DNA of 64,000 bases from Dimorphilus gyrociliatus (taxonomy: Eukaryota > Animalia > Annelida). The position numbers and the translations under genes are program-made. The notes beneath the pieces were generated by a model. The model was not told the DNA's origin and did not search any database. It was given only the letters and a program-made list of their open reading frames with translations. The stretch covers positions 1,230,570 through 1,294,569 of the forward strand of contig CAJFCJ010000019.1 in NCBI GenBank assembly GCA_904063045.1, read 5' to 3'. Each line of letters opens with the position of its first letter. The first letter of the stretch is position 1. This document shows, one piece after another, positions 3,060 through 24,000 of this stretch.

Positions 3060-6000
3060 ATGAGAGTTGTTGCTCTAATAAGGTAAATTTTGAAATAAAC
3101 TGTAGTCTGGGGACATTGATAGTTGATACATTGCTACTATGGTATTGTAGAGTAATCAATACCAAGTCTAAAGTTTAAATGTTTTTTTTTCTTGGATAAT
3201 AAATTATATTTATATAAATTCTTGCAGTGGCGGCAAAGATAGCTGCTATAATATGATGCAATGTATGGCCGATCATCATGAAATTGTTGCTTTGGCAAAT
3301 TTAAAACCAAAAGATCAAGGTTGAAAAATCTTTCCAAAGTTTCTTTTTACTATATATAATAGTCTTCGATATTTGATAAGTTCATTTCATAACGCAGATG
3401 AATTAGATAGTTATATGTATCAAACTGTTGGACACCATGCCATTGATCTTTATGCGGAAGCTATGGATTTACCTTTGTTTAGAAGAACAATCGAAGGTTC
3501 ATCTAAATTAACGGTCAATAGCTACTTGCCAACAGAAGGGGATGAAGTAGAAGATCTATACGAATTATTGAAAGAGATAAAAGAAAAGGTTAAGGTAGAC
3601 GCCGTCTCCTGTGGAGCTATACTGTCTAATTATCAACGCTTGCGTGTTGAGAATGTGTTAGTATTTCACTTGATTTTAGGTGTACTTTGTATCATTTACA
3701 TCTTTCAAATTGTAGTTGCTCAAGATTGGGATTGACTTCTTTAGCTTATCTTTGGCAACGTGATCAGAGTGAATTACTACAGGAAATGCTATCAGCTTCC
3801 TTGGAAGCTATTATAATTAAAACAGCATGCCTAGGTAAAGTACATTAAATAGAAATATGGTTATTCAGGCGCGTACACCCTTTCAGTAAGAGAAAGATGA
3901 TAAGGTTCTTTGTCGAAGAGCTTTAGAAAATTATCTCTTGGCATCAAATTACATATTATTTCACATTTTATATCCTTTAGAGGGCGTCCCATAATCCTTT
4001 CTACGTAAGCTTTACACAATTAACTTTATTTAATTTATGTTTGTAAATTATTCATGTTTAAGCTCGTTTACGATCTAATTGAGTCGTAACTAAAATCACT
4101 CTGTTTATCTATAAATATACATTAATACCCTTTGTGTAGTATTTATAGAGATGATAGTCGCAAACTTTTTTTTGGTATATTTGTATCCTTCAAATTGTAT
4201 TTAAAGAATAGAAAAGTCATCATTAATTAAAAATCAAAAGAAAGAAATACTAATAGAAGAGAGGATTGTGCAAAGATAAAATTTAAATAATTACATTTAT
4301 GATATCGTGTGTATTAAAATATATTGTAGTTAGAGAAAGCATAGAAAGGAGGAGTATATTTGATGCTACAGTGATTCCAATAGAAGACTCGTCCTTTTCA
4401 GTAGTGCTCTTTGGATCCAGACTACAACTGGTGCAGCCAAATTTGCATATATCTATGGAATTGCAGGCGCATTGTTCTCGAATAAGTTTATTGCCTTCGC
4501 TTATTAAAATGTTTCCAGGATTTGCGGAACAAGTTGAAAATTTATTTTTGAATAATTGACAGTAAGACAGAATTTTTTCAGTTGAGCAATTCATAGCTTT
4601 TCCGGGGCATTCTAGTTCAAAATATGCCTTTGTAGCATGTTCTGTGCAGCAGACTTCTACACAATTTGTGCTGATGTTTCGTATTTGTAAAAAAAATAGG
4701 GCGATTACCTTTAAGAGAGCTAAGGCAGTCATTTTTAAAATTCTATTTTGTAAAAGATATATTTTCTTGGAGAGTAGCCATGCAAACTAAATATTGCCCT
4801 CTAACAGCAGAACAGTAGACAGTGCTACAGAGCGTTAAAGAATTAGTATTGAACGATTTTTTTTTTAATGCTTCATTTAGTCCTATGTAATATTTGTTAG
4901 TTTTGCTGTGTTGTTTAGGTGGGAAAAAAATCTATAACAAGGGAATTCTCGTGCTTTCATTAGTGTTAAAACAATTCAAGCAAGACAGTTAATATGTCTA
5001 TATATAAAAATTTCTATATTACCCCCCATGTAGAATCTATTTCTATAAATTTATTATGAAAACCATCTGCATCGGTTATACGTGTTATAAGAACTATATA
5101 TATATAAATATATCATTATTTATACTAACTCTAGTTGCATAGTGATTTTCTTATAAAACTTATAAGCTCTTATTCGCAAATATTGACTATTAATATTCTC
5201 TTTAATTGATGTAGCATAAATTACAGTTATATTATGAATATTTCTCACAATCTAGATAATGTGAACACATTTGTTAACCGCAAAAACAAACATTACTTTC
5301 CCATAGGTCTGGATCCGAAAGAACATTTGGGCAGGTCGCTGAAAGATATACAGCCGCATCTTCTAGACATGGTATATCATTTGTAACCTACTTATATTAT
5401 CGACCTGACTAAGAGGCGTCTATATTTCCATTTCATTCTGTGTATTTTTAGAACAAAAAGTACGGCTTGAACGTTTGCGGTGAAGGAGGGGAATACGAGA
5501 CATTCGTTATCGATTGTCCTATATTTAAGAAACGTCTATTAATAGATGAAGGATCAGTTGAGAAAGTAATTTCACAAAACGATTCCATGGTTGGTTATCT
5601 GAATTTAAAGAAAGTTAGCCTGCAATCTAAAAGTAGTCAAGTAACTGACAATTCAGTTAGCTTGGTGTATGATTCGAAGAGAACAATAGAAGAAATCGAC
5701 GCACTAAGTAGAGAGGCGAATATTTCTATTGATGATGTTGTAAAGGAAGTCGATAAAGAGGCGATGAAGAACAAACAAGAGAATCTAATAGGTAAATATT
5801 CTGAAGTGTAAAATAAAAAGGGAAGTCTGTCAAGAAAAAAACTCGTTTAATAGGATTTAGCGGTGATAAAGTTCTGTTTAGTGAAAGACCCGAAATCGGT
5901 ATGGCTTTTATTAGCAGCGTGATTGCCTTTCATCATGAAGATGTCACTTTAGTGCAGTCCTCAAAGAAGGCGATGAATAATCTTCAAGGTTAATTTATAA

Positions 6001-7785
6001 AAAAATATCTAGCAATCAAATATTGCACTGTTAGGTTGCCTTTAATTTTTGATTTATTTCTTTAGAATGCGTCAAAGAGAAAGGTTATAAATTAGAGGAC
6101 GTTGTTAGTGTTAATTTATGGGTAAATAATATGTCAGTATTCGCAGAAGTTAACAACGTTTATAAAACATATTTTGCCCATAAACCTCCAATAAGAGCAT
6201 GCGTTCAGGCACCATTACCCAAGAACGTACATTGGCAGCTAGATTGTATCCTAACCAAAGAAAATCCCAATAACAGGACAAATTTACATGTTCAGGGTAT
6301 TAGTCATTGGGCACCGGCAAATATTGGTCCATATAGTCAAGCTAACACAACTAACGGTTACGATTTCTACGCCGGGCAAATTGCTATGGTCCCGGGAACT
6401 TTAGATATTATTCCTGGAGGAATAACAAACCAATGCCATTTAGCAGCAAGAAACGCTTTTCGTGCTATTCGAGTGCATTCCAAGAATAAGCCAAACTTAG
6501 TAATTATCTACGTTAGTATTTTAATCATCTAAAATCATTTCTCTTATTCTTTTCTGTCTTATATAAAAAAAATTTCATTTTTTTGTATATTTTTTATTAC
6601 CAAATTTTACAGTTAATTCCTCTCTTTAAACGTTATTATTTATTTATTTATTTATTTAAAATAAAACAGGTGACCGCGTTGGAAAATGTTGTATTGGCCG
6701 AAAACGTGTGGCGTTATCATTTCGACCGAACTTACAGCGCACCAGGCATACAGGTTTTTATTTTTTTATTGCTGCAGTCTCAATGAATAGAAAGCTAATT
6801 TTTTTATTTTAAATAGAATAAAAAACAAAAAAAAAAGCCATAATGTTAGGTTTATTCGACTATAGAAAGAAAATGAGATATTAATGTATATATTGTCAAA
6901 AAACTGTCTGTAATATTTTGCTTTTTTTTTCTATCTCATTCCCAATAGACTAAAGAATCGGTCGACGATTGTCATATGATATCTTGCGTTTTGCCTGTTC
7001 TACCGAAAAACGCTTTGATAGAATATCAGGCGATCAGAATCGACGGGGGAGAAGAAAGTCTGTCTTTAAAGGCGGATTTTAAAAGAAATGAGCTGTATAA
7101 ACTAGATTATGAAACGAGGGAATTGTGCAGAAAAGATGAATCTATACCTTTCTACGAAGTATTCGTTTCGTGTATGTTAAGATCGTATTATATCCCTAAG
7201 GTTATCCAATAATATTTCTATAACACCGATTAGGCGAGCACCCTTTGTCTTTGGTTGGTAAGGAGAGTGAATTGGTCAAAGATGTTATCAATTTCCCAAA
7301 TCTATCAAGAATCTTATACGAAAGACCCTTGAAGATCTTCTTTAATCAGAGCCTCTTTCAATACGATAGAATTTCATCGGGTAAGTTAATAAAAAGAGAG
7401 AAAAAAACTAATATTAATGATAATATTTGAGTAAGAGAGGAAAAAAAAAAAATAGTAGGCGGAATAAATTTTTCCTTCATCCGTAAAAAAATAATATATA
7501 TATATAAAAAGGCAGCCCTTTAGTTTCAAAAAGAAAAGACCTCTTACACAGTTTGTCGATAAGCAGACGATTGTATAGTTTTTGAAATATTTATCGCTCA
7601 TTGTCAAGTTCATATCCGTTTTCTCTGTGGTGTTAGTCCTCAATACGAAAGAATCATTTATAGGTTGCATGTAAATAATTAAATTAGGTCGGAAGAATCT
7701 GTAAAAAATTTGGTAGTATATTTATTACTTTTATCGATCTACTACTACGATGGTTAACGTTTGACCGAGTTACAGTTACTTGTAG

Positions 7786-7817
<32 letters not shown>

Positions 7818-8412
7818 TATTTAGTTTGATATATTCGGTCTACAAGGAGACCAATCTCCATCCAACTTCTAGTTTACATTCTTTCTATTGTTAGTTCCTC
7901 TTCTCTCATTCTTTTTTAATTATTATTCCATTTGCCAGCTAAAATAAAGCAGCAACAATGGCAGAAACGACAGTAAATTACAAAAACAATAGATATAAAA
8001 CTACGGTAGAAGAGAGTAGAAAATCGATGGCTACTTCTATCCCGAAATTATACTAGGGAAAATGCTTATTCCGCTGGGAATCTATACGATCGAATTTTTA
8101 ATATCTTTGGATCAATTTTATGATGGTTTTGTCAGCGAATAATATCAATATAGCATTAAGATTTTAAAACTAGATTAACGAAGAAGCAGAGAGAAAGAGA
8201 GAGAGAGAGTGAGAGAGTTTATCTATGTTGATTACATTTTAGTAGGAATTATTAAAGTATAGGAAAGATAGGAAGACTAGCTTAAGCAAGTGTTTTAATT
8301 TATCGTTCTCTTTTCAGCGTTGGAGTCGAATGGTTTCACTGGAGCCATCAGCCTCATTCCAGTAAATTACGTGAAAAAAGAAAATGGCTTATTTAACTTG
8401 TTCGTCTTATAA
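3060..8412 (+). CDS. DPH6: Diphthine--ammonia ligase, long form with C-terminal RidA/YjgF-like domains
   Basis: Spliced MRVVALI|SGGKDSCYNMMQC, then ELDSYMYQTVGH, LGLDPKEHLG and LNVCGEGGEYETFVIDCPIFKKR. RidA-like segments PPIRACV and HVQGISHWAPANIGPYSQA follow. Probable last exon 8318-8412 (GAISLIPV), in matching phase 1 with the donor at 7380/7381. Confidence 0.88.
4283..4732 (-). CDS. Small Cys-rich protein with signal peptide and hydrophobic C-terminus (GPI/TM-anchored candidate), nested antisense in DPH6 intron 3835-5306
   Basis: 149-aa ORF with an N-terminal hydrophobic stretch, 12 Cys in residues 24-103, an S/T-rich linker and a C-terminal hydrophobic tail. Confidence 0.7.
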   Translation of the reverse strand: MTALALLKVIALFFLQIRNISTNCVEVCCTEHATKAYFELECPGKAMNCSTEKILSYCQLFKNKFSTCSANPGNILISEGNKLIREQCACNSIDICKFGCTSCSLDPKSTTEKDESSIGITVASNILLLSMLSLTTIYFNTHDIINVII

Positions 8413-10209
8413 ATAATATATTTGAAGTAGGTAAACGATCTAGAAATAATAAAGGTGGCTGACATGTTAAAGTGACTATTACAAGATTATCTGGTAATAC
8501 TAAGAGATGTTTCCTTCAAATTCGTTAGATATATTGTTAAGATAAGGTTACGCGTGAGCCAAAACTAGCAACAGATGGCGGCGTTTCCACAAAAAGGTCA
8601 TCTTTTCTAAGTTGTGTATTCTCCTCCAAGACTAGTCTAGTCCATATTATATTAGCTGTTAGACTGTAACAAATTGCCTCGGGCTTCGTATGTCAGCTGT
8701 GAACTAACCAGTTATTTTAAGACCTAATGGAAAATATGAAGAAACGCCTGATATATCAAAAAGAGGGAAAGTTTATGGGCGGTCTCGTGCCCTATTGTAT
8801 TTTTTATTTAGTACTGGGCGTTGTTTTTTGGTCGAGATCGATGACAGACGGTAAATGATTAAGACTAATGGAGGTTTTTTTTCTATATTTCAATGGGCGT
8901 TCCACTGTTGTTATGAAAAGAGAAGTTTTGTAATGAGCGATGGTATTCGCACACAGAAATTGTATGACAACAAGCGTAGGTTTATTAATAGAAATCGACA
9001 AAAGATTCATTGCAGGATAAAGAGGCTAATGCACGTTTTATAATATATCTACATTCCGTTTTCAAACAGGCTTTTTCATCACGTTTTACTATTTACTGTA
9101 CAAAATGCGTAAAGCTGAAAACAAAAAAGAAAGAAAAAAGAAAGAGAATATATAATATTTTTTAATTTAATGGGTAAGGGTGCGGTTTTTATAAATGTTA
9201 AAATAGGTACATTTTCTTAAACTTTTGTTTTTAAGGCCTGCAGTATGTAAAACTGCGTATACAATATTAAAGACAATATACTCTTACATATATATATATA
9301 TACACACATATATGGATAGAAATTCCTTTCCTTTCGTTCTTTAGCTTTCCCGGTTCATTCATTCATTATTTTTTTTTTGCAACATGTGTATATATGTATA
9401 TTTGCAGTATAGACAATAAATATGTATATGTATGTATAACATTAGCGAATGGCATCCGGAAGACGGACGTTTAAGATTTAGATGCATGAAGGAATAAGAC
9501 AGAATAGTCAAAGGTAACAGACAGCGCTATGTAAATAATACATAAATAACTTTATAGAGAAAGATTGTTAGATATGCGTATATATATATATATATATATA
9601 TATATGCATATTCATACAAATCGCTCAGGGTAATAACTTTCAACAACTTGACGTTTCGACGCGTATTATAAAACAGATACAAGAAACGAGATAATATAAT
9701 TGTAGCTCCTTGACCGTTGTATCTTTTTCAATACACAAAAAAAAAGAAAAAGAGAAGAAAAAAAAAAAGTACGAAATCTTTCCTGCATTTTAGAGTTATA
9801 GATTATATAGTTTATGTAAAATAATATGAATATTCATTAAAGTAACTAGCACAAGGTTGTTTTTTTTTTCTTTCTTTTTTTTTTAATATCTTTTAATTCA
9901 TTAATAATCGGTTTCGTTTTTTCTTTAAAAAAAAAAGGAAAAAACATTGAGATCCTCACGGAAAAAAACGTTTTTTTTTCTTCCATAATTTTTAATAACG
10001 AACGAGTAAAACGCTACAACTTTTCTAACGATGCATAGATTTCCGTTTTTTTTTTTGTTTCACTTTATATGGGTGTAAGAATTTGTTTAAAATTTTTAAC
10101 ATAAAAGTTTCTCAGTCCGCTCTAGCATAATAACATATTGTTAATATTTCAAAAGGTAATTAGACTAACAGTCGATCGGTGGCGGCTGATGAAGGTGAAG
10201 GCCACTTTT

Positions 10210-12274
10210 TCAAAAACCTTTAATGTGGCAATAACTTTCTAGCGACGAAAGGATGACGTATACAACCCATAGTCCTATGAAGAAAGCGGTTGTACATATT
10301 TTAAAGTTCCTGTTTTTGCCTCCTAATTCGCCTCCGATACTTGGACGGCGTCGAATAATTAGTATAGCCATAGCTGCTAAGGCGAAACAACAGAATACGG
10401 TAACGCTGAACGCCAAAGAACCAGGATCGACTTTAAAAGGTTTGCCTTCAATGGCGTGCTTTACAGAAGCTATCGTCCAGGCAATTCCAATGCCCAGGAA
10501 GACGTTGACGGCGTTACTTCCCGTTACGTTGCCAATAGAGGAGTCAGCGTAGGCGTCGTTGATAGCTGCCACTTTGGAGGCGAACGTATCTGGCGGGCAG
10601 ATGAAAAATGAGCGATACTGCCTTAACAAGAAACGGCACTTAAGACTGGAATATAGATTAGACGAAAACATGCGCCTTGTTTTACTTGCACTAGCCGGCT
10701 CCCCGGGAAAGACTAGTGCCCATAGCTACGAAAGATATTTCAGCTACAAAGTCCTCAATTTCCATCGTATAACCAATTGACTCTTTAGCACTGTTGATAA
10801 TTACTGGCGAATAAGGCGTCAATAATAGATGAGGGTCCTCTCCTAGAGATGATCAACCTAAAAACGTGTGTTAGAAACAAAACGGAAAGTACACACGCAT
10901 ACATACACACACACACACACACATACACACGAAAAAAGCTCAATATAACAAAAAGAAGCTGGTTCTAATTTTAGAAAAATGTGTAGAGGAGGAGGAGTAA
11001 AAAAAAAAAAGATGAAGATAAATGAAAAAAGAACTCTGTGAAAGTTCAAAAAAAAAAAAAACAAAAATGTGAGTTTGGTTGGATTTAGGAAACATCGGGT
11101 ACAAACAAAAACAATAACAACAACAATAAACAAATCGGATTATATCACGTTGTTTTTCGGTTTATTTTCTACCTGGCAGACTTGTGCCTAGGGCGACGAA
11201 AGAGATAGCAGTAACTGAATCTTTCAATCCAATTGTACAACCGAACGATGAAGCCAGATCATTTATGAGAGCCGTCAAAATACCTATCATTATGATCGAA
11301 AACGTGAAGCACAACCAACCACCCCAATAATCTAAATATCAAATTTGAGAGAGAAAAAACAATAAAAAGAAAAATTAAGAGAGGAAGAGAATGGCTGAGA
11401 ATAATAAAACTAAGAAAATCGTTAAATCCCGCATGCGTATAATCGAAGAGAGTTCTCGAAAGTAATTAATCAGATTGCGACAGTTGTAAAATTAAACGTA
11501 TCGTGACTAAATGATAAGGCCTTCACCAAAAATTGTTTATTCCAATTGTTTTCTTTAAGATATACCTGGTAAACTTGTTCCTAGAGCTACAAAAGTAACT
11601 GCAGTAACTGAATCTTTTAGGCCTATTGTGCAGCCGAATGCCGCCGCAATGTCACCGATTAAGGCAGTTATTACGCCTATCATACATATCGATACGGAAA
11701 ACGCTAGCCAGCCTCCGGCCAAATCTGGAAAGCGTGTTTATCATCAAAGAGATTTCTTAATTATATACCTTATCCCACAAATACGTGTTCGTGCACTTAT
11801 AAGCTTAAATTTACTGATGTAAATAGCCCTTTAAATTATATTAATATATACAGTTTGGGCTTCAACTTGGATTATTATTAATTTAATATAAATATATATA
11901 TACTAATATATATATATATAGATTAATCAAAATTGTCACTTACCTGTCGGTGGGACGAAAGCAAACGTTACTTTCCAGAATATTGTCAAAAAGTGCATTA
12001 CATAATCCATGCAACTAGGTAATTTCTCTTCATCTTCTTCATCTTCTCCATTCTCGTCGTCTCCTGTGAATTTGATACAAAATTGAGATGATAGTTATTC
12101 TCCATTGATATAATTCAATTAAATAGAAAAATTACTAATAGAAACCTCATTTGCACGATTCAGAAATAAAAGCAGATCAAATTTTTGTGTATGTGTGTGT
12201 AGGTGTGTATATACAGTAGATAATCTTTCTCGTACACGAAATAATTGAACTGTATACATACGTTTATATATATT

Positions 12275-12334
<60 letters not shown>

Positions 12335-15300
12335 ATATATATATATACACACACACACAGATACATATATATGTATATATATATATATATCATCTACCTA
12401 TCTATATATATATATATATATATATATATAGATATATATGGTATTTTATGGTAAAATAATAATAAATAATAAAAGTATAGTTCTCTTATCCAATTAAGGC
12501 TTTTGACTGGGGATGTAAAAATTTGTTTTTCCTTTCTCATATACATACATATATATATATATATAAAGTATGTATTTCTCTATTTTTTTTGGTCTTGTGA
12601 AGTTTTTACTAATGCTATTGTGACGACAGAATGTTTTTTGGCGTCTAAAAGCAACTATAATAATAATAATCATAATGGAAATAAAAATACTCTGCTTTAA
12701 CGTTCGTGAACATAAATAAATGCACATTGCATCACATACCTCCTTTTTTGCCTTCTAAACAAGTAAAAAAAAAAAAGATATACAAAAAAATAAAAATAAA
12801 AGAAGAAAATAAAATTTTCACTTTTTTTTTTCTTCTAATTTTTTTTTAAATATAATAAAAGAAATTCAGTTTTTTTTCTACTTTTTATTTTATGTTTCTT
12901 TTTGTTTTTTTTAAAAAAAAGTGAGAAATAAAATTTATTTTTATTTATATTTTTTTTTATCAAAGTTTATATGAATATTGTAGTTGTTTTTTTTTTTTTA
13001 TAGAAGGAAGATATTATTTATAGGGGAAATGAAAAAAATATAGAGAAAACTGGAGGAGGACGGGCAGTGTGAGGGGAGAGAGAGAAAGGATAGGAGGAAT
13101 GGAGATTTTATAGATAGATAGAGAAGGAGAAAATGAAGACAATTAGATAGATATATAGGTAGATAGATTCTTAGAGGTAGAGAGGGTAAAAGAGATAGAA
13201 AGAGGAGAGAGAGAGAGACAGGTAGATTGAAATTATGTTTGTTAATTAGGTTATTTACCTGAGCTGACGGTTATAGCTTCGATAAACTGTTCTCTCCAGC
13301 TAGACGTTCCAACAACCAGGGCGACATTTGTTTTTTTCAGTAATTTATCAACGGTTGACTTGAATTCTATACTTTCTCTTATTTGTACTTCGATTTTTCC
13401 AGCTTCACCCAATCTCGGTTTTCCTAATTCTACAATCTTATCGTCAAAGACAGGTTCCAACGCAACATCGGTTATTGAATTCCTATTTTCTGTTTTTAGT
13501 AGGGAAAAGAATATTGTAGGAAAGAGTTATTTATAAATCAACATGTAATATAGAAGTATAAAATAGGGAGATTGAAAACGAGTGCAAACTAAATAGAAAA
13601 AATAGGCCGAAAGTGCATCTATGAAAATATAAAGAAAGAAAAACATAAGAATTCTCTTTCTATTATTCTTTTTTTTATTATAATATTATATTCTTATTCA
13701 TTCATTCCAAGAAAAAAAGTGCCGAAGCTTGTTGAACTATTTTGAGCTTAAGTATTACTGCAATACCTTTGCCGGCGAATAGTCGTCGCATATCAAAGGC
13801 TAGAGGGCGAAAATAATCAATATAGGTAGGCATGTAAGTAATTATGCATATGTTACAAAGAAAGATTTGAAAGAATGTAAACGAAAGAGGTTCATATCTA
13901 TAATTTTCAGCTAGTGGTTATTATCTTCAAACCAATCTAATAATTTTGCGTGTTAACAAAAGCTAAAACTATAATGCCAAATGGGTAGTTATAAGTGAAG
14001 GAGGGATGTATTTATGTGTTATTTTATACAATATATCACATACATTTCGCATAAAAAAGAGACTATATATATTCTTATATATAGATTATATAATTGTATA
14101 TATATATACTGTATATAAATTATATAAGTTGGATAAAAGGTAATAAACAAAAGAAGAGTCTTACCGCTTCCCTTTCGTACAAGTTCAGGTTCGCTAAGTT
14201 CAACAAAGAACGATTCAGTTTTTTCGTATTCTTCATCATCAACGATCCGAACCCGGATTATTTGTCTAAAAAACCATCAAACTTGATAAAATGCACTTAC
14301 AAACTTAATTATTTAATAAAAGAATTAATTAAGTCTAAACGCCTAATTCGTTAAAGGTTTACGGGGTAATTTATCGTAATACAAAATCTCCAGGTAATTC
14401 ATGTATAATATATGTGATTAAACCAAATACATAATACCTATAGATATGTGCAGAGTATATATTGTACATAAATATAATATATATATATATATATTATATG
14501 CAGTATATACTGGATATATATCTCTACGTTTTCGAAGGCAACATTTGGTGCATGCAACACCTGTGGCACCTGGCATTTCGGCTTTTTAACGTTAGTTAAG
14601 AGTTGAAAATGTTTTTTTTCCTTTACTCAAATTTTTTTCTCTTTAACTTTTTCATTTACATCTTTTTGCCTAATCTATTTAGCTAAACTTGTTAGAATAA
14701 GAAAGAAAGTCTGCACACGAATACAGCAAAATACAACTGCAAAATGTTTTAAATCAAAGACATAAAAAATAGAAAACTATACGTTTCTCTTGGTTCACCT
14801 CTCCCCAAAGTTTTTTTCCTTCACACTCTATTTTTACTGATGTACTATTTCACCTAATCGATTATGGACTGAGTTTCGATCAGTCTATGTAAATCGATTA
14901 TTGTTGAAGGAAGTACAGAGAGAGAGCGACAGAAAGAGAGAGGAGCTTGAGGCACGTGGAGTGTAAGTACCGGAGGTTGGTCGCAAGGAGGAAGGAAAGA
15001 TTGCAATCGCATCAAGATATGGTCGGGTTATAAGACTAATATCACATAATCTATAAAACTTTTCCAATTAAGCAACTCTTTTTTTTTTATTAAAAACGTG
15101 TTTTGCAAACCAAAAAATCTTTTGATGGACGTCGGCAGAAAAACGTCAAAATTGCGCTTATAAACAGGTGAACGGAATTCTTCACGCGCAATTACAGCCC
15201 TATATAGACGCCACGCCCTACATTAAAACCTGGCGGCGTCTCTTCGAGCAACCAAACAATCATTCATATAAACGATGTTTTGTCCGAAGTCTAACGTTTC

Positions 15301-15444: not shown

Positions 15445-18400
15445 TCTTGCTATATTAATCGTACATGCATATAACAAGTATATAAATATTTCTAGTTTAT
15501 GTATCGCTGCACCCATGACACTTAAAGATAGATGTAAGAAGATTAATAAAACTGGAATAACATCCTATTGTAAGCGCGAAATACATATGACGTAGGGTCT
15601 ATGTACTTGTAATAAAAAAAATTAGTGTTTCTGAAACATTCTAGAAGCATATGAATATTTTAGTGGAGTATGCATCTATATAATAGTTGAAGTAGATCTA
15701 TTGAATAGCATGATTCATAATCCTATATGTTTAATAGTAAGTTAGTATATAAGAAATATATATAGATATATACATGTACACTATATAGGTGATATAAATA
15801 GATAGGTACCATTTATATTTATACATACATACATACATACATATATACTGTATATATATATATATATATATATTTGATTGAGTATACGTATTTATGTAAA
15901 TATATTGCATATATATATACATATTGTATGTAAAGTATTTAAATACTATTTCTATAGACATTTATACATTGATGTTTTGTTTGAATATTGAATAGTATTA
16001 AGATATTTATACATTCATTTTTCATATATAAATACATACATACTATAAATATAGATCAGGCACCTACAAAAGAATAAATTGTACATAAGCCTATGAAACA
16101 GTTATATATATATATATACTAGAGAGTGTGTGAAACACGTTTTATTATATTTAGGATATGAACGAAAGTATCTGGAACGGGGCAATCGATTTGTGTCATA
16201 TGTTATTATATGGAATCTCTCGAGTTAGCTCAGGCTGAAAGAGGCGTAATTTAATATTAAAAAATCAAGTGGCTGTTGAGTCTGAACATCCGGGTCTGTA
16301 GCAGCTATAGCTGTTCGGTTCGAATTACAACTGCAGTTGCAAGAAATAGCCTATAGAAATATATAGCAAGCGCTATATTTCTAACCATCTTGTAGGCGCC
16401 GCGTTCCTATAGTAACCCTAACAGTGGACAAACTATAGGCCGCTTACGTGATTGATAGCCTTTGGAGTGGAGAGGACGAAGGAGGGAGAAGAGTGGGACG
16501 TAAACCCACATGAATAAAACATACAATAAACGCATACATAACGTATTACTTACTCAGTCTGGTCGTTTTCGAATACCAACTGGCCCGAAGCATCGAAGAA
16601 ATCTCTGCCGTTACCCTTGGCCGTGCCTTCTATAGTTGTATAGGGTACAATAACCTTTCCACGTGCTCCCGATGAACGGCAAACCTTTATTTCCGCTTCT
16701 CCTACCGATTCGGATACAGACATTGTCGAACCTTCAAAATGAAAGATGCCTGCATGATCGTCGTCCAAAATCATAACAGTTGCCATTGATGGCATGACCA
16801 ATTGAGCTACGCTATTTTGATCTCCGCCATAACCTGGAACGCGTAGATTGTGCAATTTAACGTAAAAGTGCTCATCCTCTTCGAATATATCATCATCAAT
16901 AATGGTAACAGAGAATTGACAGTGCATCTGACCCGGTTGAAATTCCAAAGTTCCGCTGGCAAATTCGTAATCCGTTCCGGCGTTAGCTGTTCCATCTTCT
17001 GTCACGTAATCGACTTGTATAACTCGGTTTGTGTCTCCCCCGTGTCTGGAGACTGTCAATTGAAAAGTGCCAACATTCTCCATAACTGTATAATGACCAG
17101 GCTCAAAGAAGATTCGGGTGACGTTATCATCATGATCCAGATCAAGTTTGACATCCTCCAAAGACGAACGACGTTCGACTTTACTCTTTTTTATGACATT
17201 TCCGCCACCAGTCAACTTTCTTGTCGCCTGTATCCGGTAGAAAGCACGCGACTTCGGACCTCTATTCATAGCTTCCATTTCTGCCATTTCTTCCAATGAT
17301 TTCATATCCAAATTAGGATGCTTTTTACGAAGTTCGCGTAGAATATCGATAAAATCCTTACGGTGCTTCTCGAACTCTCGAATTTCCGTATCGTCACTGT
17401 CTAATCCTTTAAACGTGATTGCATCTTCAGAAGCCGAACCAACGTGATTTCTCTCCGCTAATTCCAAATCTCCGTCGACCTGTATTGATTTCCTTCCATG
17501 GCGGCTTGCATGGTACTTCTTATTCATAAACTTCATAAAGAAGATTTTCCTATCGGCTATATATGCTGTTAAAACGGTTGCGGGGAAGAAGAGAAATGTG
17601 AGAACAGCTTCCCAAACTTCTACTTCACCCTTGGAGAAACCGGCGATAATGATATATAGCCACAGATAGGCGAATATACTCCATGTTGCGGTTATAAAGA
17701 AAACCCGTAAATGTTTAATTCGTCGGCAATCCCCGTCAGGTATAACGTATATGCATAAACCAATGATTATGAACAGGTTAAAAGCTGCTGAACCAACTAT
17801 CGTACTAGGCCCTAATTGTCCAGCTTTAAAGTCATTACCAACGATTTCGATAATCGATAATAAAATCTCGGGAGCCGATGAACCTAACGCCATAAGTGTC
17901 AAATTCGATACTGTCTCATTCCAAACTCGGACATTTACGACCGTTGTTTCACCGCTTGGCAGTTTAATAGTGATTTCGCGTTCTTTCGACGTAATCACTT
18001 CAATAGCGGCCATGAATCGATCGGCTATTATCGACACACCGAGAAACATGAAAATCATCGCCGCCATATAAACTGTGGCCCTAGCCGCCTTGTCTCCAGC
18101 AGAAAGATTTTTTTGCGGTTCCCACAGAGGCAAAATGACCTAAAAATCAATATTTCGTTTACGTATATTGCTTACACACATATATAAAATATATATGTAT
18201 ATACATATTTACATGCATACTGTTCGCCCAAGTTTATGTACGTTATTTATACAATATGTATCATATGTTTTCTCAATACCTTGTATATGGATAACATGTT
18301 TTTAAGCTCTCCCTATTAGACTACCATTATAGTTCTATCGACATAAAGACATCGTCTAGTGGCCTAATGTTATAGTGACAAGATGGATAAAAGTTTGATT

Positions 18401-21032: not shown

Positions 21033-24000
21033 CTACAATTTTACTTCGAAAGTTTTCTGAGCATTGCCCATTTCAACAGCGAATGGATTAGTGGGGGCTA
21101 CTGGTGCTTGAGGAGGCCCCCTAGGTTTTGCCCCTACCCAGGCGGCGTCAAAAGGGTCGAAACCCGATTTATTGGGGACGGTTGGTTGATGGCCAAATAC
21201 AGACGTTCCTGCTGTATCGACCGATTGGCTGCGATTATGCTGATTTGCAACGTAAGAAGTTTTAAACGGGTTCGTTGATACTGTTTGCAGCCAAGTTTCT
21301 CCATCTGGCCGTCGTTCCTCTTTTTGCCAAGGATTAGGGTGTCGAATCGGTTCGGGTAATTGCACTGATTTGGAATTACTTTCTTGTTGGTAAACTAAAA
21401 AAAAAGTTCAATTATAATTTTAATACTCTTGGTTATTGATCGTTTACTTACTGGTCGCTTTGGTAGTTACGTGATTGACAGTATTTGGATTAGTTTTCAG
21501 AGGTAAACTTGCCAAATACGGATCATCCTCGTTCACATTCAACCCACTCGAAATCTGCTTACAAATATCAGAGATTGATGCTTCTGCTTCTTCTTTTGAT
21601 GGAGAAGCTTCAGGAATAGTATGCACACTGAAGCCATTCGGGTAATTGGTGTCCCCGCCTTGCCTTTCTAAAGTTGATGGAAGGTCTTCCAACCGAAGTG
21701 AGTGTTGGCGTTTAAAAGGAGAGGATTTTTGACTGAGTTTTTGAAATCCCTTAAAGGATCCCTAAACGCAAGAAGGAGAAAAAAAACATTTGATTAGTAA
21801 AACTCAAGACAATAAAAAGCGAACATTGTTTTAATTTAACACCAAGCAAAACTTTTCACACATACACACAATTTTCAGGCTTTAATGGAAAGGTGATCAA
21901 GGAGTTTTGTAAAGTGACTACATACAGCTAATATATATATATATATAAATCTATAGAGGGAGGGTTAAAAAATAATCTCTTACCAAGTGCTGAATAGGCG
22001 AAGAGCGCGAAGAAAGGGAAAAAAGATATTTTTTATAAGAGAAGCCTTAATATATTTATAAATTTGATATTATAGTATATGATACTATAACTAAACTTAC
22101 CTGTCTGATTAGCATATCCTGGGAAGCATGGGGTCTTTGTACAGCGTGTGGGTTTTGTATATTTTTTTCAGGCACAGGATCGGCAATAAGCGCTGCCTGA
22201 GGATCTTCAAGACGTTCAGTTAAAGTTGTTTGTTTAAAAGATCCGGTTCTCGTAAAACTAGTTCCTTTTTCGTTATATGTTACTTGAACATTCGAAGCAT
22301 CTTTATCCCTTTTTTGCTTCTTTTCTAAACATAGTCCAAACGCACATCCTACAGCATGAGATAATCTCTCACCAGATTCTTTAAGAGCCAAAAATCCGTG
22401 GCACATCCATCTGCGAGATGTTCCATCTCTACAGATATATGCAAATCCCTTTTCATGTGCTCTATCCGGAGCGCAAAATGAAACTTTCTCTATAGTTTGA
22501 TCAACGATTAATCCTTTACTTATTTCGTCAACTACTCTTAAAGCATCACCGCTAACGTATAAAATAGCTCTTTGGTATTTTCCCTTGCACTGCTGAAATA
22601 ATGAAAAAACTTAATTAAAGAATTAGCTCAATAATCCTCTATATATAACAATTAGATTAGTAGTTCTTTTTCTGTTGGAAAAAGGGAAATAGTTTGTTAT
22701 AAATTAAAGGAAGCAAGCTCCACTAAAAAATCATAAAAATAAACATAAATTCTAAAAAAGCAGACGCTTGATGGTTAGATCAGTTTTTTATTAGCTGTTT
22801 TTTTTCGCCCCCTTTTGCTCTTACCGGCGTATTTACACGATCGTCTTTTCTTTTTCGTCGGGAACTCATTCGAAAGGACATTCTTTGCCAAACAGAGCGA
22901 GATTTTTTCTGTAACACAACACCTTCACTAACTTGAAAAGGCATGCAATGGACAATGTAAAAAAAAAATTGTTTCTTGTTTTTTTTTTGCTCAGTTTTGT
23001 TAGTTAAGTTTGTCTTCTTTTGCAAAGGGTAGTTTAGAAGGTTATGACAAACTGGTTAAAAGAGAATTAACAACAAAGAAACAATATTAAATAACAAAAT
23101 AACTGTTGGGAGAAGGGGAAAAAAATATGACAAGTACAATATAAATAAAAAGAATAGAGAATTTTTACAGCTGATGTAATAGTAGAACAGTTAAAAAATT
23201 ATCTCTTATCGTTTTCGATAAGCTTGTTTAGATAGGTAAAGATAAGCGGACAAAGCACTGATATTAATTTACAGAACGGAAGCATGAATATGGAAAATGG
23301 TTATATGGAAAATAGTCTTAAACGTTAAATACACAGTAAATAGATATGATAAAACATTGAAAAATGATCTGAAATATGAATAATATCAAGAAACTATTAG
23401 TAATATATAAAATAAACAATTATGAGTTTTCAAACTGAATAATAAATACAGATATCAAAATATATGTATTAATATAGTTATGTAGATGTATCGTTGCAGA
23501 TAGTTATTTGTATGCTATCTATTAATAATTTAAATATAGTAAAGGTGAGTTTATATCCTTTTTTTATAGTTAAGAAAATATGCAATGATACGTTAGTCTC
23601 ATTAGAAAAATGATCAAGAATGGTTTAGTATTACACAATACAATGTGATAAGAGTCGGAATATGCTATATAGAGATTTGATAGAAAACTAACCGCTTTTA
23701 GGGCTTTCACTGCTTCTTCGCAGACCTGCATACCTCTCGATTCGAATACTTCCACGCACCCTAGATACTGTTTAGATAAACGTTAAATGGATTAAGGAAA
23801 ATTTAATTCAGATTAAGAGTTATCTCCTAGGACAAAAATGAACTAAAATTAGATCAAATTCCGATATAAAGATTGACCAATATCAAAGTTCAATGATAGT
23901 TTATTACAACTAGCTTATTTTATGCTTACCCGAACTTGAAACGAGCAAGAGCCTTCTCTGACTTTCTTTTCATCTTCCTGCCATTGATGAGGTTTGGATG

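What the first reader, a model, noticed from the sequence alone, without database searches (positions are those of the whole stretch)
11173..11724. NCX carries two tandem 159-nt paralogous exons for TM6 and the alpha-2 ion-transport repeat (probable mutually exclusive splicing in the membrane domain)
Seen: two same-length, same-phase exons (11566-11724 and 11173-11331), both with intact AG/GT sites and open frames, 234 nt apart. Synonymous sites have diverged while [21 protein letters not shown] is retained. They differ in TM6 ([22 protein letters not shown] vs [22 protein letters not shown]), including G>N at the normally conserved IGD. Established: known NCX isoform diversity (vertebrate exons A/B and C-F, Drosophila CALX1.1/1.2) lies in cytosolic CBD2, and in the 10-TM model TM6 is part of the gating bundle and TM7 carries the alpha-2 ion site. 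Inference: one gene makes two exchangers with different transport machinery. I know of no described case in the SLC8 membrane domain, though I cannot search. Because 159 is divisible by 3, frameshift does not enforce exclusivity.
Basis: partly seen in the sequence, partly recalled or inferred. Interest (0 to 1): 0.85.

Follow-up and report, generated by a model that had tools for sequence, protein, structure and literature searches.

The report
Swappable membrane helix in worm NCX
A worm's sodium/calcium exchanger gene holds two intact neighbouring copies of the exon for its sliding membrane helix TM6; relatives keep the same pair, so the gene very likely makes two exchangers by using one copy or the other, which has not been described for this transporter family.

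Summary
On the minus strand, exons 11566-11724 (A) and 11173-11331 (B) are both 159 nt and phase 1, with AG/GT sites and open frames. They are 234 nt apart, 64% identical in DNA and 39/53 in protein.

The pair is not a local accident. Capitella teleta and four unnamed, probably annelid, assemblies carry the same intact pair. In each, the upstream copy is the divergent one and the downstream copy the canonical one. Lottia and Tubulanus have one copy. Synonymous sites are saturated (dN 0.23). Independent duplication in each species is rejected (AU p 0.014). Intron-free transcripts of relatives carry exactly one copy, of either type.

I obtained no RNA evidence for this species.

The ion-binding GTSLPD motif and the TM6-TM7 loop are identical in A and B. 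Twelve of the 14 differences lie in TM6, mostly on one helical face.

Reviews place NCX splicing only in CBD2, and I found no paper describing this pair. It is a new member of a known kind, tandem-duplicated mutually exclusive exons. Interest is moderate to high. The scan has not noted this pair before, on this or other DNA.

The parts
16541..18139 (-). Large NCX exon: TM1-5 with alpha-1, the XIP/Na_Ca_ex_C region, CBD1 and part of CBD2
   Evidence: ORF 16550-18133. Pfam Na_Ca_ex, Na_Ca_ex_C and two Calx-beta stretches. 68-70% identical to full-length NCX of relatives.
14160..14258 (-). CBD2 exon, single copy in this window
   Evidence: tblastn of P0050, P0039 and P0033.
13257..13445 (-). Exon for the end of CBD2 and the cytosolic loop
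   Evidence: tblastn, 67-79% identity; ORF 13251-13460.
11944..12063 (-). Upstream constitutive exon (acidic stretch, then [27 protein letters not shown]). It aligns with the membrane-embedded helices just before TM6 and ends in phase 1.
   Evidence: Sequence and GT donor. 93-96% identical in relatives. TMH1/TMH2 assignment from PMC10550945.
11566..11724 (-). Exon A: the upstream, divergent copy of the TM6 + TM7a (alpha-2 start) exon. 159 nt, phase 1, weak polypyrimidine tract, GTATAT donor.
   Evidence: Groups with the upstream copies of L006, L013, Capitella and P0248.
11332..11565 (-). 234-nt intron between the two alternative exons
   Evidence: No significant docking/selector pairing found.
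11173..11331 (-). Exon B: the downstream, canonical copy. 159 nt, phase 1, long polypyrimidine tract, GTAGAA donor.
   Evidence: 66-89% identical to the single exon of all 36 full-length homologues, and closer to it than exon A in 35 of them.
10705..10842 (-). Relic third copy (pseudo-exon). The AG acceptor is kept in phase, the donor is GG instead of GT, it is 7 codons shorter, the TM6 half is no longer hydrophobic, and a stop codon follows.
   Evidence: tblastn E 5.6e-6 to exon B over 31 aa; sequence read.
10210..10589 (-). Last exon: the Asp of GTSLPD, the rest of alpha-2, TM8-10 and the stop codon
   Evidence: ORF. Pfam Na_Ca_ex positions 53-149. 65-75% identical to homologues.

Best explanation
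The window holds an intact SLC8-type Na+/Ca2+ exchanger gene on the minus strand, about 18562 to 10210. Its exon for the sliding helix TM6 and the first half of TM7 was duplicated in tandem long ago.

Each mature mRNA most likely takes exactly one of the two copies, giving two exchangers. They share all ion-coordinating residues and the whole regulatory loop, and differ on one face of TM6. TM6 is the peripheral helix that, together with TM1, slides to switch between inward- and outward-facing states.

Exon B is the ancestral-type default, with the stronger splice sites. Exon A is a faster-evolving regulated alternative. The isoforms therefore probably differ in turnover, in regulation of alternating access, or in contacts with lipid or a partner. 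They probably do not differ in ion selectivity.

Shown: the anatomy, deep conservation of both copies, purifying selection on both, and single-copy transcripts of either type in relatives. Inferred: exclusive use in this species, and any functional difference between the isoforms.
For: - Anatomy and splice sites.
- Either exon supplies Pfam Na_Ca_ex positions 2-50, and the last exon supplies 53-149, so one copy is needed and two would be redundant.
- The same pair lies between the same flanking exons in L006, L010, L013, Capitella (L009) and P0248, all with AG/GT sites and open frames.
- Lottia and Tubulanus have one copy.
- dN is 0.23 with dS saturated between A and B. Upstream copies are 63% identical across species and downstream copies 81%, whereas the window's third copy has decayed.
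- The AU test rejects species-by-species duplication (p 0.014) and does not reject one clade of upstream copies (p 0.149).
- Intron-free full-length proteins P0030 and P0032 carry only an upstream-type exon, grouping with the Capitella upstream copy at 95% support. Many others carry only the downstream type.
- P0030 and P0027 are 96% identical in the flanks but 74% in this exon (Fisher p 3e-5).
- In all four genomes the upstream copy has the weaker polypyrimidine tract and the weaker donor.
- A/B differences fall on one helical face (moment 0.46, P about 0.009).
- The exon aligns to human NCX1 chain residues 761-812 (8jp0) or 772-823 (8sgi). The sliding role of TM1 and TM6 is from PMC10550945.
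Against: - I have no junction reads or transcripts from this species.
- No mechanism that enforces exclusivity was found. The intron is too long for steric exclusion, 159 nt keeps the frame so NMD cannot police double inclusion, and no significant intronic pairing was seen.
- No pair of A and B transcripts from a single species was found in the protein collection.
- The 53-residue tree is weakly resolved, and the L010 upstream copy groups with its own downstream copy.
- Only Capitella among the genomes with the pair is a named annelid. The others are unnamed ENA or Logan assemblies.
Confidence: 0.8

Rival explanations
1. Exon A is an unused duplicate (pseudo-exon). Only exon B is spliced into mRNA, and the open frame of A is left over from a recent duplication.
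For: Every homologue's exon except P0030's resembles B more than A. Capitella's annotated protein uses only the downstream copy. A has the weaker splice signals. There is no RNA evidence here.
Against: Synonymous sites between A and B are saturated, so the duplication is old. Even so, A keeps its frame, its length and its AG/GT sites in six genomes. The real relic copy shows what disuse looks like. Transcript-derived P0030 and P0032 carry an upstream-type exon.
Confidence: 0.08
2. Both exons are used, but not strictly exclusively. Transcripts with both or with neither are common, and the pair acts mainly to tune the level of functional protein.
For: 159 nt keeps the frame, so nothing at the RNA level obviously forbids double inclusion or double skipping. 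No selector or docking structure was found. A paper on Drosophila Calx reports mutually exclusive exons that also behave as cassette exons (PMC10484994).
Against: All 36 full-length homologue proteins examined have exactly one copy. The only proteins with two copies are genomic read-throughs that include translated intron. A second TM6-TM7a would break the topology and duplicate Pfam positions 2-50.
Confidence: 0.1
3. The pair is an assembly artefact, either collapsed or expanded haplotypes or a misjoined paralogue.
For: None specific.
Against: The copies are only 64% identical in DNA and sit in correct order between single-copy flanking exons. The same arrangement occurs in independent assemblies of other species. 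A run labelled organism C holds 98% of the sampled words of 11173-11724, though it may be the source sample.
Confidence: 0.02

Closest known systems
Vertebrate NCX1/NCX3 exons A and B (SLC8A1, SLC8A3)
   Same: Same gene family. Tandem homologous exons, with one of the two present in every transcript, giving tissue-specific exchangers (PMC9820601).
   Different: Those exons encode part of the cytosolic Ca2+ sensor CBD2 and set the number of regulatory Ca2+ sites. Here the pair encodes TM6 and TM7a of the transport domain, and the CBD2 exon in this gene (14160-14258) is single copy.
Drosophila CALX1.1/1.2
   Same: An invertebrate NCX with alternative exons. Mutually exclusive exons are reported in Calx (PMC10484994).
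   Different: From my own knowledge, the CALX1.1/1.2 difference is five residues in CBD2, not in the membrane domain. I did not examine the fly locus.
Tandem-duplicated mutually exclusive exons that swap transmembrane segments in ion channels (for example voltage-gated Ca2+ and Na+ channels)
   Same: A homologous membrane segment is swapped by tandem exon duplication. This class is enriched in ion-transport proteins and arose repeatedly in different phyla (PMC9741552). Here too the same exon is duplicated in a crab and a bug.
   Different: Those are channels. This is a secondary-active exchanger, and the swapped part is the moving helix of an alternating-access mechanism.
Other exon pairs noted in this genome by the scan (beta-arrestin pair, four TRPV pore exons)
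   Same: Same genome and the same kind of event, according to notes s1-080466 and s1-080181.
   Different: Different genes. I did not check those notes.

Membership tests
SLC8 / NCX Na+/Ca2+ exchanger (CaCA superfamily) | Two Na_Ca_ex membrane domains carrying the alpha-1 and alpha-2 repeats | tested here: met
   Pfam PF01699 in the large exon (residues 23-190), and again in exon A or B (profile 2-50) plus the last exon (profile 53-149). The alpha-2 motif GTSLPD is present.
SLC8 / NCX Na+/Ca2+ exchanger (CaCA superfamily) | Large cytosolic loop with two Calx-beta domains and the Na_Ca_ex_C/XIP region | tested here: met
   PF03160, two stretches, E 1.4e-51; PF16494, E 8e-32.
SLC8 / NCX Na+/Ca2+ exchanger (CaCA superfamily) | Electrogenic 3Na+:1Ca2+ exchange | not testable with these tools
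   Needs expression and current recording.
Mutually exclusive exons from tandem exon duplication | Adjacent homologous exons of the same length and phase, each with working splice sites and an open frame | tested here: met
Mutually exclusive exons from tandem exon duplication | Both copies kept by selection in other species | tested here: met
   Six genomes carry the intact pair. dS is saturated with dN 0.23. AU test.
Mutually exclusive exons from tandem exon duplication | Mature transcripts contain exactly one of the copies, and each copy is used | tested here: inconclusive
In relatives, intron-free full-length proteins have one copy, of either type.
Mutually exclusive exons from tandem exon duplication | A known means of exclusivity: a too-short intron, a frame shift with NMD, or competing RNA pairing | tested here: not met
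   The intron is 234 nt (99 nt in Capitella) and 159 nt keeps the frame. Inverted-repeat and duplex searches did not exceed shuffles (z -1.1 to +1.1).
Vertebrate-type NCX A/B splicing | The alternative exons lie in CBD2 | tested here: not met
   The pair aligns to human NCX1 chain residues 761-812 of 8jp0 (TM6-TM7a). The CBD2 exon here is single copy.

The most novel reading that the evidence does not exclude
The exon for the sliding helix TM6 of NCX is an old, selected switch. It would be shared by annelids as far apart as this animal and Capitella, and would have arisen again in arthropods. The two versions would set different alternating-access kinetics or different lipid or partner regulation in different cell types. 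In at least one relative (L013) it would combine with a duplicated last exon, giving up to four membrane domains from one gene.
Probability: 0.45. Interest if true: 0.7.

Novelty: new member of a known kind. Interest (0 to 1): 0.58.

Why it matters
All described NCX isoform diversity lies in the cytosolic Ca2+ sensor. Here evolution has kept two versions of the moving helix of the transport domain while holding the ion sites fixed.

That amounts to a natural helix-swap experiment on the sliding-door mechanism proposed from the NCX_Mj and human NCX1 structures. Expressing the two isoforms, or grafting the differing face onto NCX1, could show which TM6 residues set turnover rate, inactivation or lipid sensitivity.

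There is also a practical point for annotation. Gene models in Capitella miss the upstream copy, and models in a crab and a bug read through both copies.

Tried and rejected
- Spliced-junction patterns for either isoform were absent from JGI metagenome contigs.
- Contigs of the closest relative (94% identical, L001 and L002) end before the exon pair. A small-ORF search found no near-identical exon A.
- L003-L005 have no downstream exons within 10 kb.
- Cluster members of annelid-like transcripts are different species, not isoform pairs.
- RefSeq isoforms of six mollusc and brachiopod genera never differ in this exon.
- dN/dS could not be given as a ratio because dS is saturated.
- No residue column separates all upstream copies from all downstream copies.
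- Searches for docking/selector RNA pairing gave only AT-rich matches and duplex energies within the range of shuffles.

Full report
**The thing itself.** The minus strand of the window carries an intact NCX (SLC8-type) gene.
- The large exon, 18139-16541, has Pfam Na_Ca_ex, Na_Ca_ex_C and two Calx-beta stretches.
- Smaller exons lie at 14258-14160, 13445-13257 and 12063-11944.
- Then come the two exons in question, and the last exon at 10589-10210.

The exon ending at 11944 leaves one base (G). Exon A (11724-11566) and exon B (11331-11173) are each 159 nt. Both start after AG, end before GT, and read open in the frame set by that G. Both end with one base that joins AT of the last exon to give the Asp of GTSLPD.

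The two are 102/159 identical in DNA and 39/53 in protein. Of 54 codons, 23 differ only synonymously and 14 change the residue. Each exon finds the other at E 1e-22. Each alone matches Pfam Na_Ca_ex positions 2-50 above the gathering score, and the last exon continues at 53-149. The protein therefore needs one copy, and two would be redundant.

**A third copy.** It keeps an in-phase AG, but it has GG where the donor GT should be. It is seven codons shorter, has lost the hydrophobic TM6 half, and runs into a stop codon. It is closer to B (E 5.6e-6). It shows what an unused copy looks like in this genome.

**Which copy is the ancestral type.** In 35 of the 36 full-length homologues, the exon at this position is closer to B (66-89% identical) than to A (61-78%); the exception is P0030, at 69% to each. 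B is therefore the canonical form and A the derived one. It lies in B, and that position is Gln in oysters and Thr in Lingula.

**Relatives.** The best named matches of the large exon are annelids: Paralvinella, Ridgeia and Capitella at 70-71%. A nemertean is at 67% and molluscs at 64-68%. Another agent's note names the genome Dimorphilus gyrociliatus. I did not test that.

I fetched DNA around homologues and searched it with the exon peptides. An intact pair lies between the same flanking exons in each of these:

| Source | Upstream copy | Downstream copy |
|---|---|---|
| L006 | 6954-7112 | 7903-8061 |
| L010 | 7656-7814 | 8477-8635 |
| L013 | 2496-2654 | 3990-4148 |
| Capitella teleta, L009 | 21108-21266 | 21366-21524 |

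In Capitella the two copies are only 99 nt apart, and the annotated protein uses the downstream one. The genomic read-through P0248 also holds both copies. The four pairs with DNA in hand are 159 nt with AG and GT, and L013's two copies are also 159 nt with open frames.

Lottia gigantea and Tubulanus polymorphus have a single copy between the same flanking exons. RefSeq isoforms of Mya, Lingula, Saccostrea, Dreissena, Ostrea and Crassostrea never differ in this exon.

An exhaustive search with exon A also turned up GenBank models of a crab (Portunus, MPC16585.1) and a bug (Nesidiocoris, CAB0012747.1). Both read through two copies with translated intron between them. The same exon has therefore been duplicated in arthropods too.

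**Age and selection.**
- Between A and B, dN is 0.23 and dS is beyond saturation. The same holds for most cross-species comparisons.
- Upstream copies average 63% identity across the six genomes, and downstream copies 81%.
- In a 53-residue tree, the upstream copies of the window, L006, L013, Capitella and P0248 group together (70% support). L010's upstream copy groups with its own partner.
- An AU test does not reject a single clade of all upstream copies (p 0.149). It does reject separate duplication in each species (p 0.014).

The pair therefore predates the split between this animal and Capitella, and both copies have been kept since.

**Use in transcripts.** I have no reads for this species.
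- Junction patterns that would match either isoform were absent from JGI contigs.

In relatives the evidence is indirect but consistent. Full-length proteins called as single ORFs on contigs of 3-7 kb must come from spliced mRNA, and each has exactly one copy. P0030 and P0032 carry an upstream-type exon, grouping with the Capitella upstream copy at 95% support. P0021, P0039, P0050 and others carry the downstream type. P0030 and P0027 come from close relatives. They are 96% identical in the flanking exons but only 74% in this exon (Fisher p 3e-5), as expected if they used different copies.

**Splice signals.** In all four genomes with DNA in hand, the upstream copy has the poorer polypyrimidine tract and an off-consensus donor (GTATAT, GTTTGT, GTTTGT, GTACCA). 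The downstream copies have GTAGAA, GTAGGC, GTAAGT and GTGAGC. This fits a default exon B and a regulated exon A.

I found no mechanism for exclusivity. The intron is 234 nt, 159 nt keeps the frame, and neither inverted repeats nor duplex energies stand out from shuffles.

**What differs.** The exon aligns to human NCX1 chain residues 761-812 (8jp0) or 772-823 (8sgi). That is TM6, the short loop and TM7a up to the alpha-2 ion-site residues.

Of the 14 differences between A and B, 12 lie at exon positions 2-29 (TM6), none in FGCTIGLKD, two in TM7a (V/I and T/S), and none in GTSLP(D). Over five pairs, the differences fall on one helical face (positions 7, 10, 11, 14, 18, 26, 28 and 29; moment 0.46, P about 0.009).

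In the human structure, TM1 and TM6 are long peripheral helices. Their sliding switches access to the ion sites, and the inactivation assembly locks them in place (PMC10550945). The likely consequence is a change in kinetics, regulation or lipid contact, not in ion selectivity. This step is inference.

**Comparison with what is known.** Known NCX splicing lies in CBD2. [quoted passage not shown] The 2008 gene-structure study and the nematode study mention no duplicated membrane exon. Further searches found nothing.

Tandem-duplicated mutually exclusive exons are a known class. They are enriched in ion-transport proteins and prone to arise repeatedly (PMC9741552). This is a new member of that class, at a site that is new for the NCX family.

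Noticed in passing
window 10705-10842 (-): A decayed third copy of the TM6/alpha-2 exon. The acceptor is kept in phase, the donor is GG, it is 7 codons shorter, and a stop follows. If spliced in through a downstream GT, it would act as a poison exon.
   Followed up: partly
L013 10019-10390 and 18533-18904 (also L007, L008): A related assembly (ENA ERZ25069859) has the TM6 exon pair and also two intact tandem copies of the last exon (TM7b-TM10), 8 kb apart. With both pairs, the gene could make four membrane-domain variants.
   Followed up: partly
L009 21108-21266 (Capitella teleta KB302576.1): An unannotated upstream copy of the exon lies 99 nt before the annotated one. The deposited protein ELU04186.1 shows only the downstream form.
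   Followed up: yes
P0249 (Portunus trituberculatus MPC16585.1), P0250 (Nesidiocoris tenuis CAB0012747.1): The deposited arthropod gene models read through two copies of this exon with translated intron between them. These are probably mis-annotated alternative exon pairs.
   Followed up: partly
P0450 (JGI contig, 84 aa): One exon copy is followed by two degenerate partial repeats of its 3' part, similar to the window's relic copy.
   Followed up: no
I worked beside it and sent none of it to search tools afterwards.
   Followed up: no
same genome, another piece (note s1-084227): Another note reports three microexons in 'the NCX regulatory loop' on a different piece, so the genome may hold a second NCX gene. 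I did not examine it.
   Followed up: no
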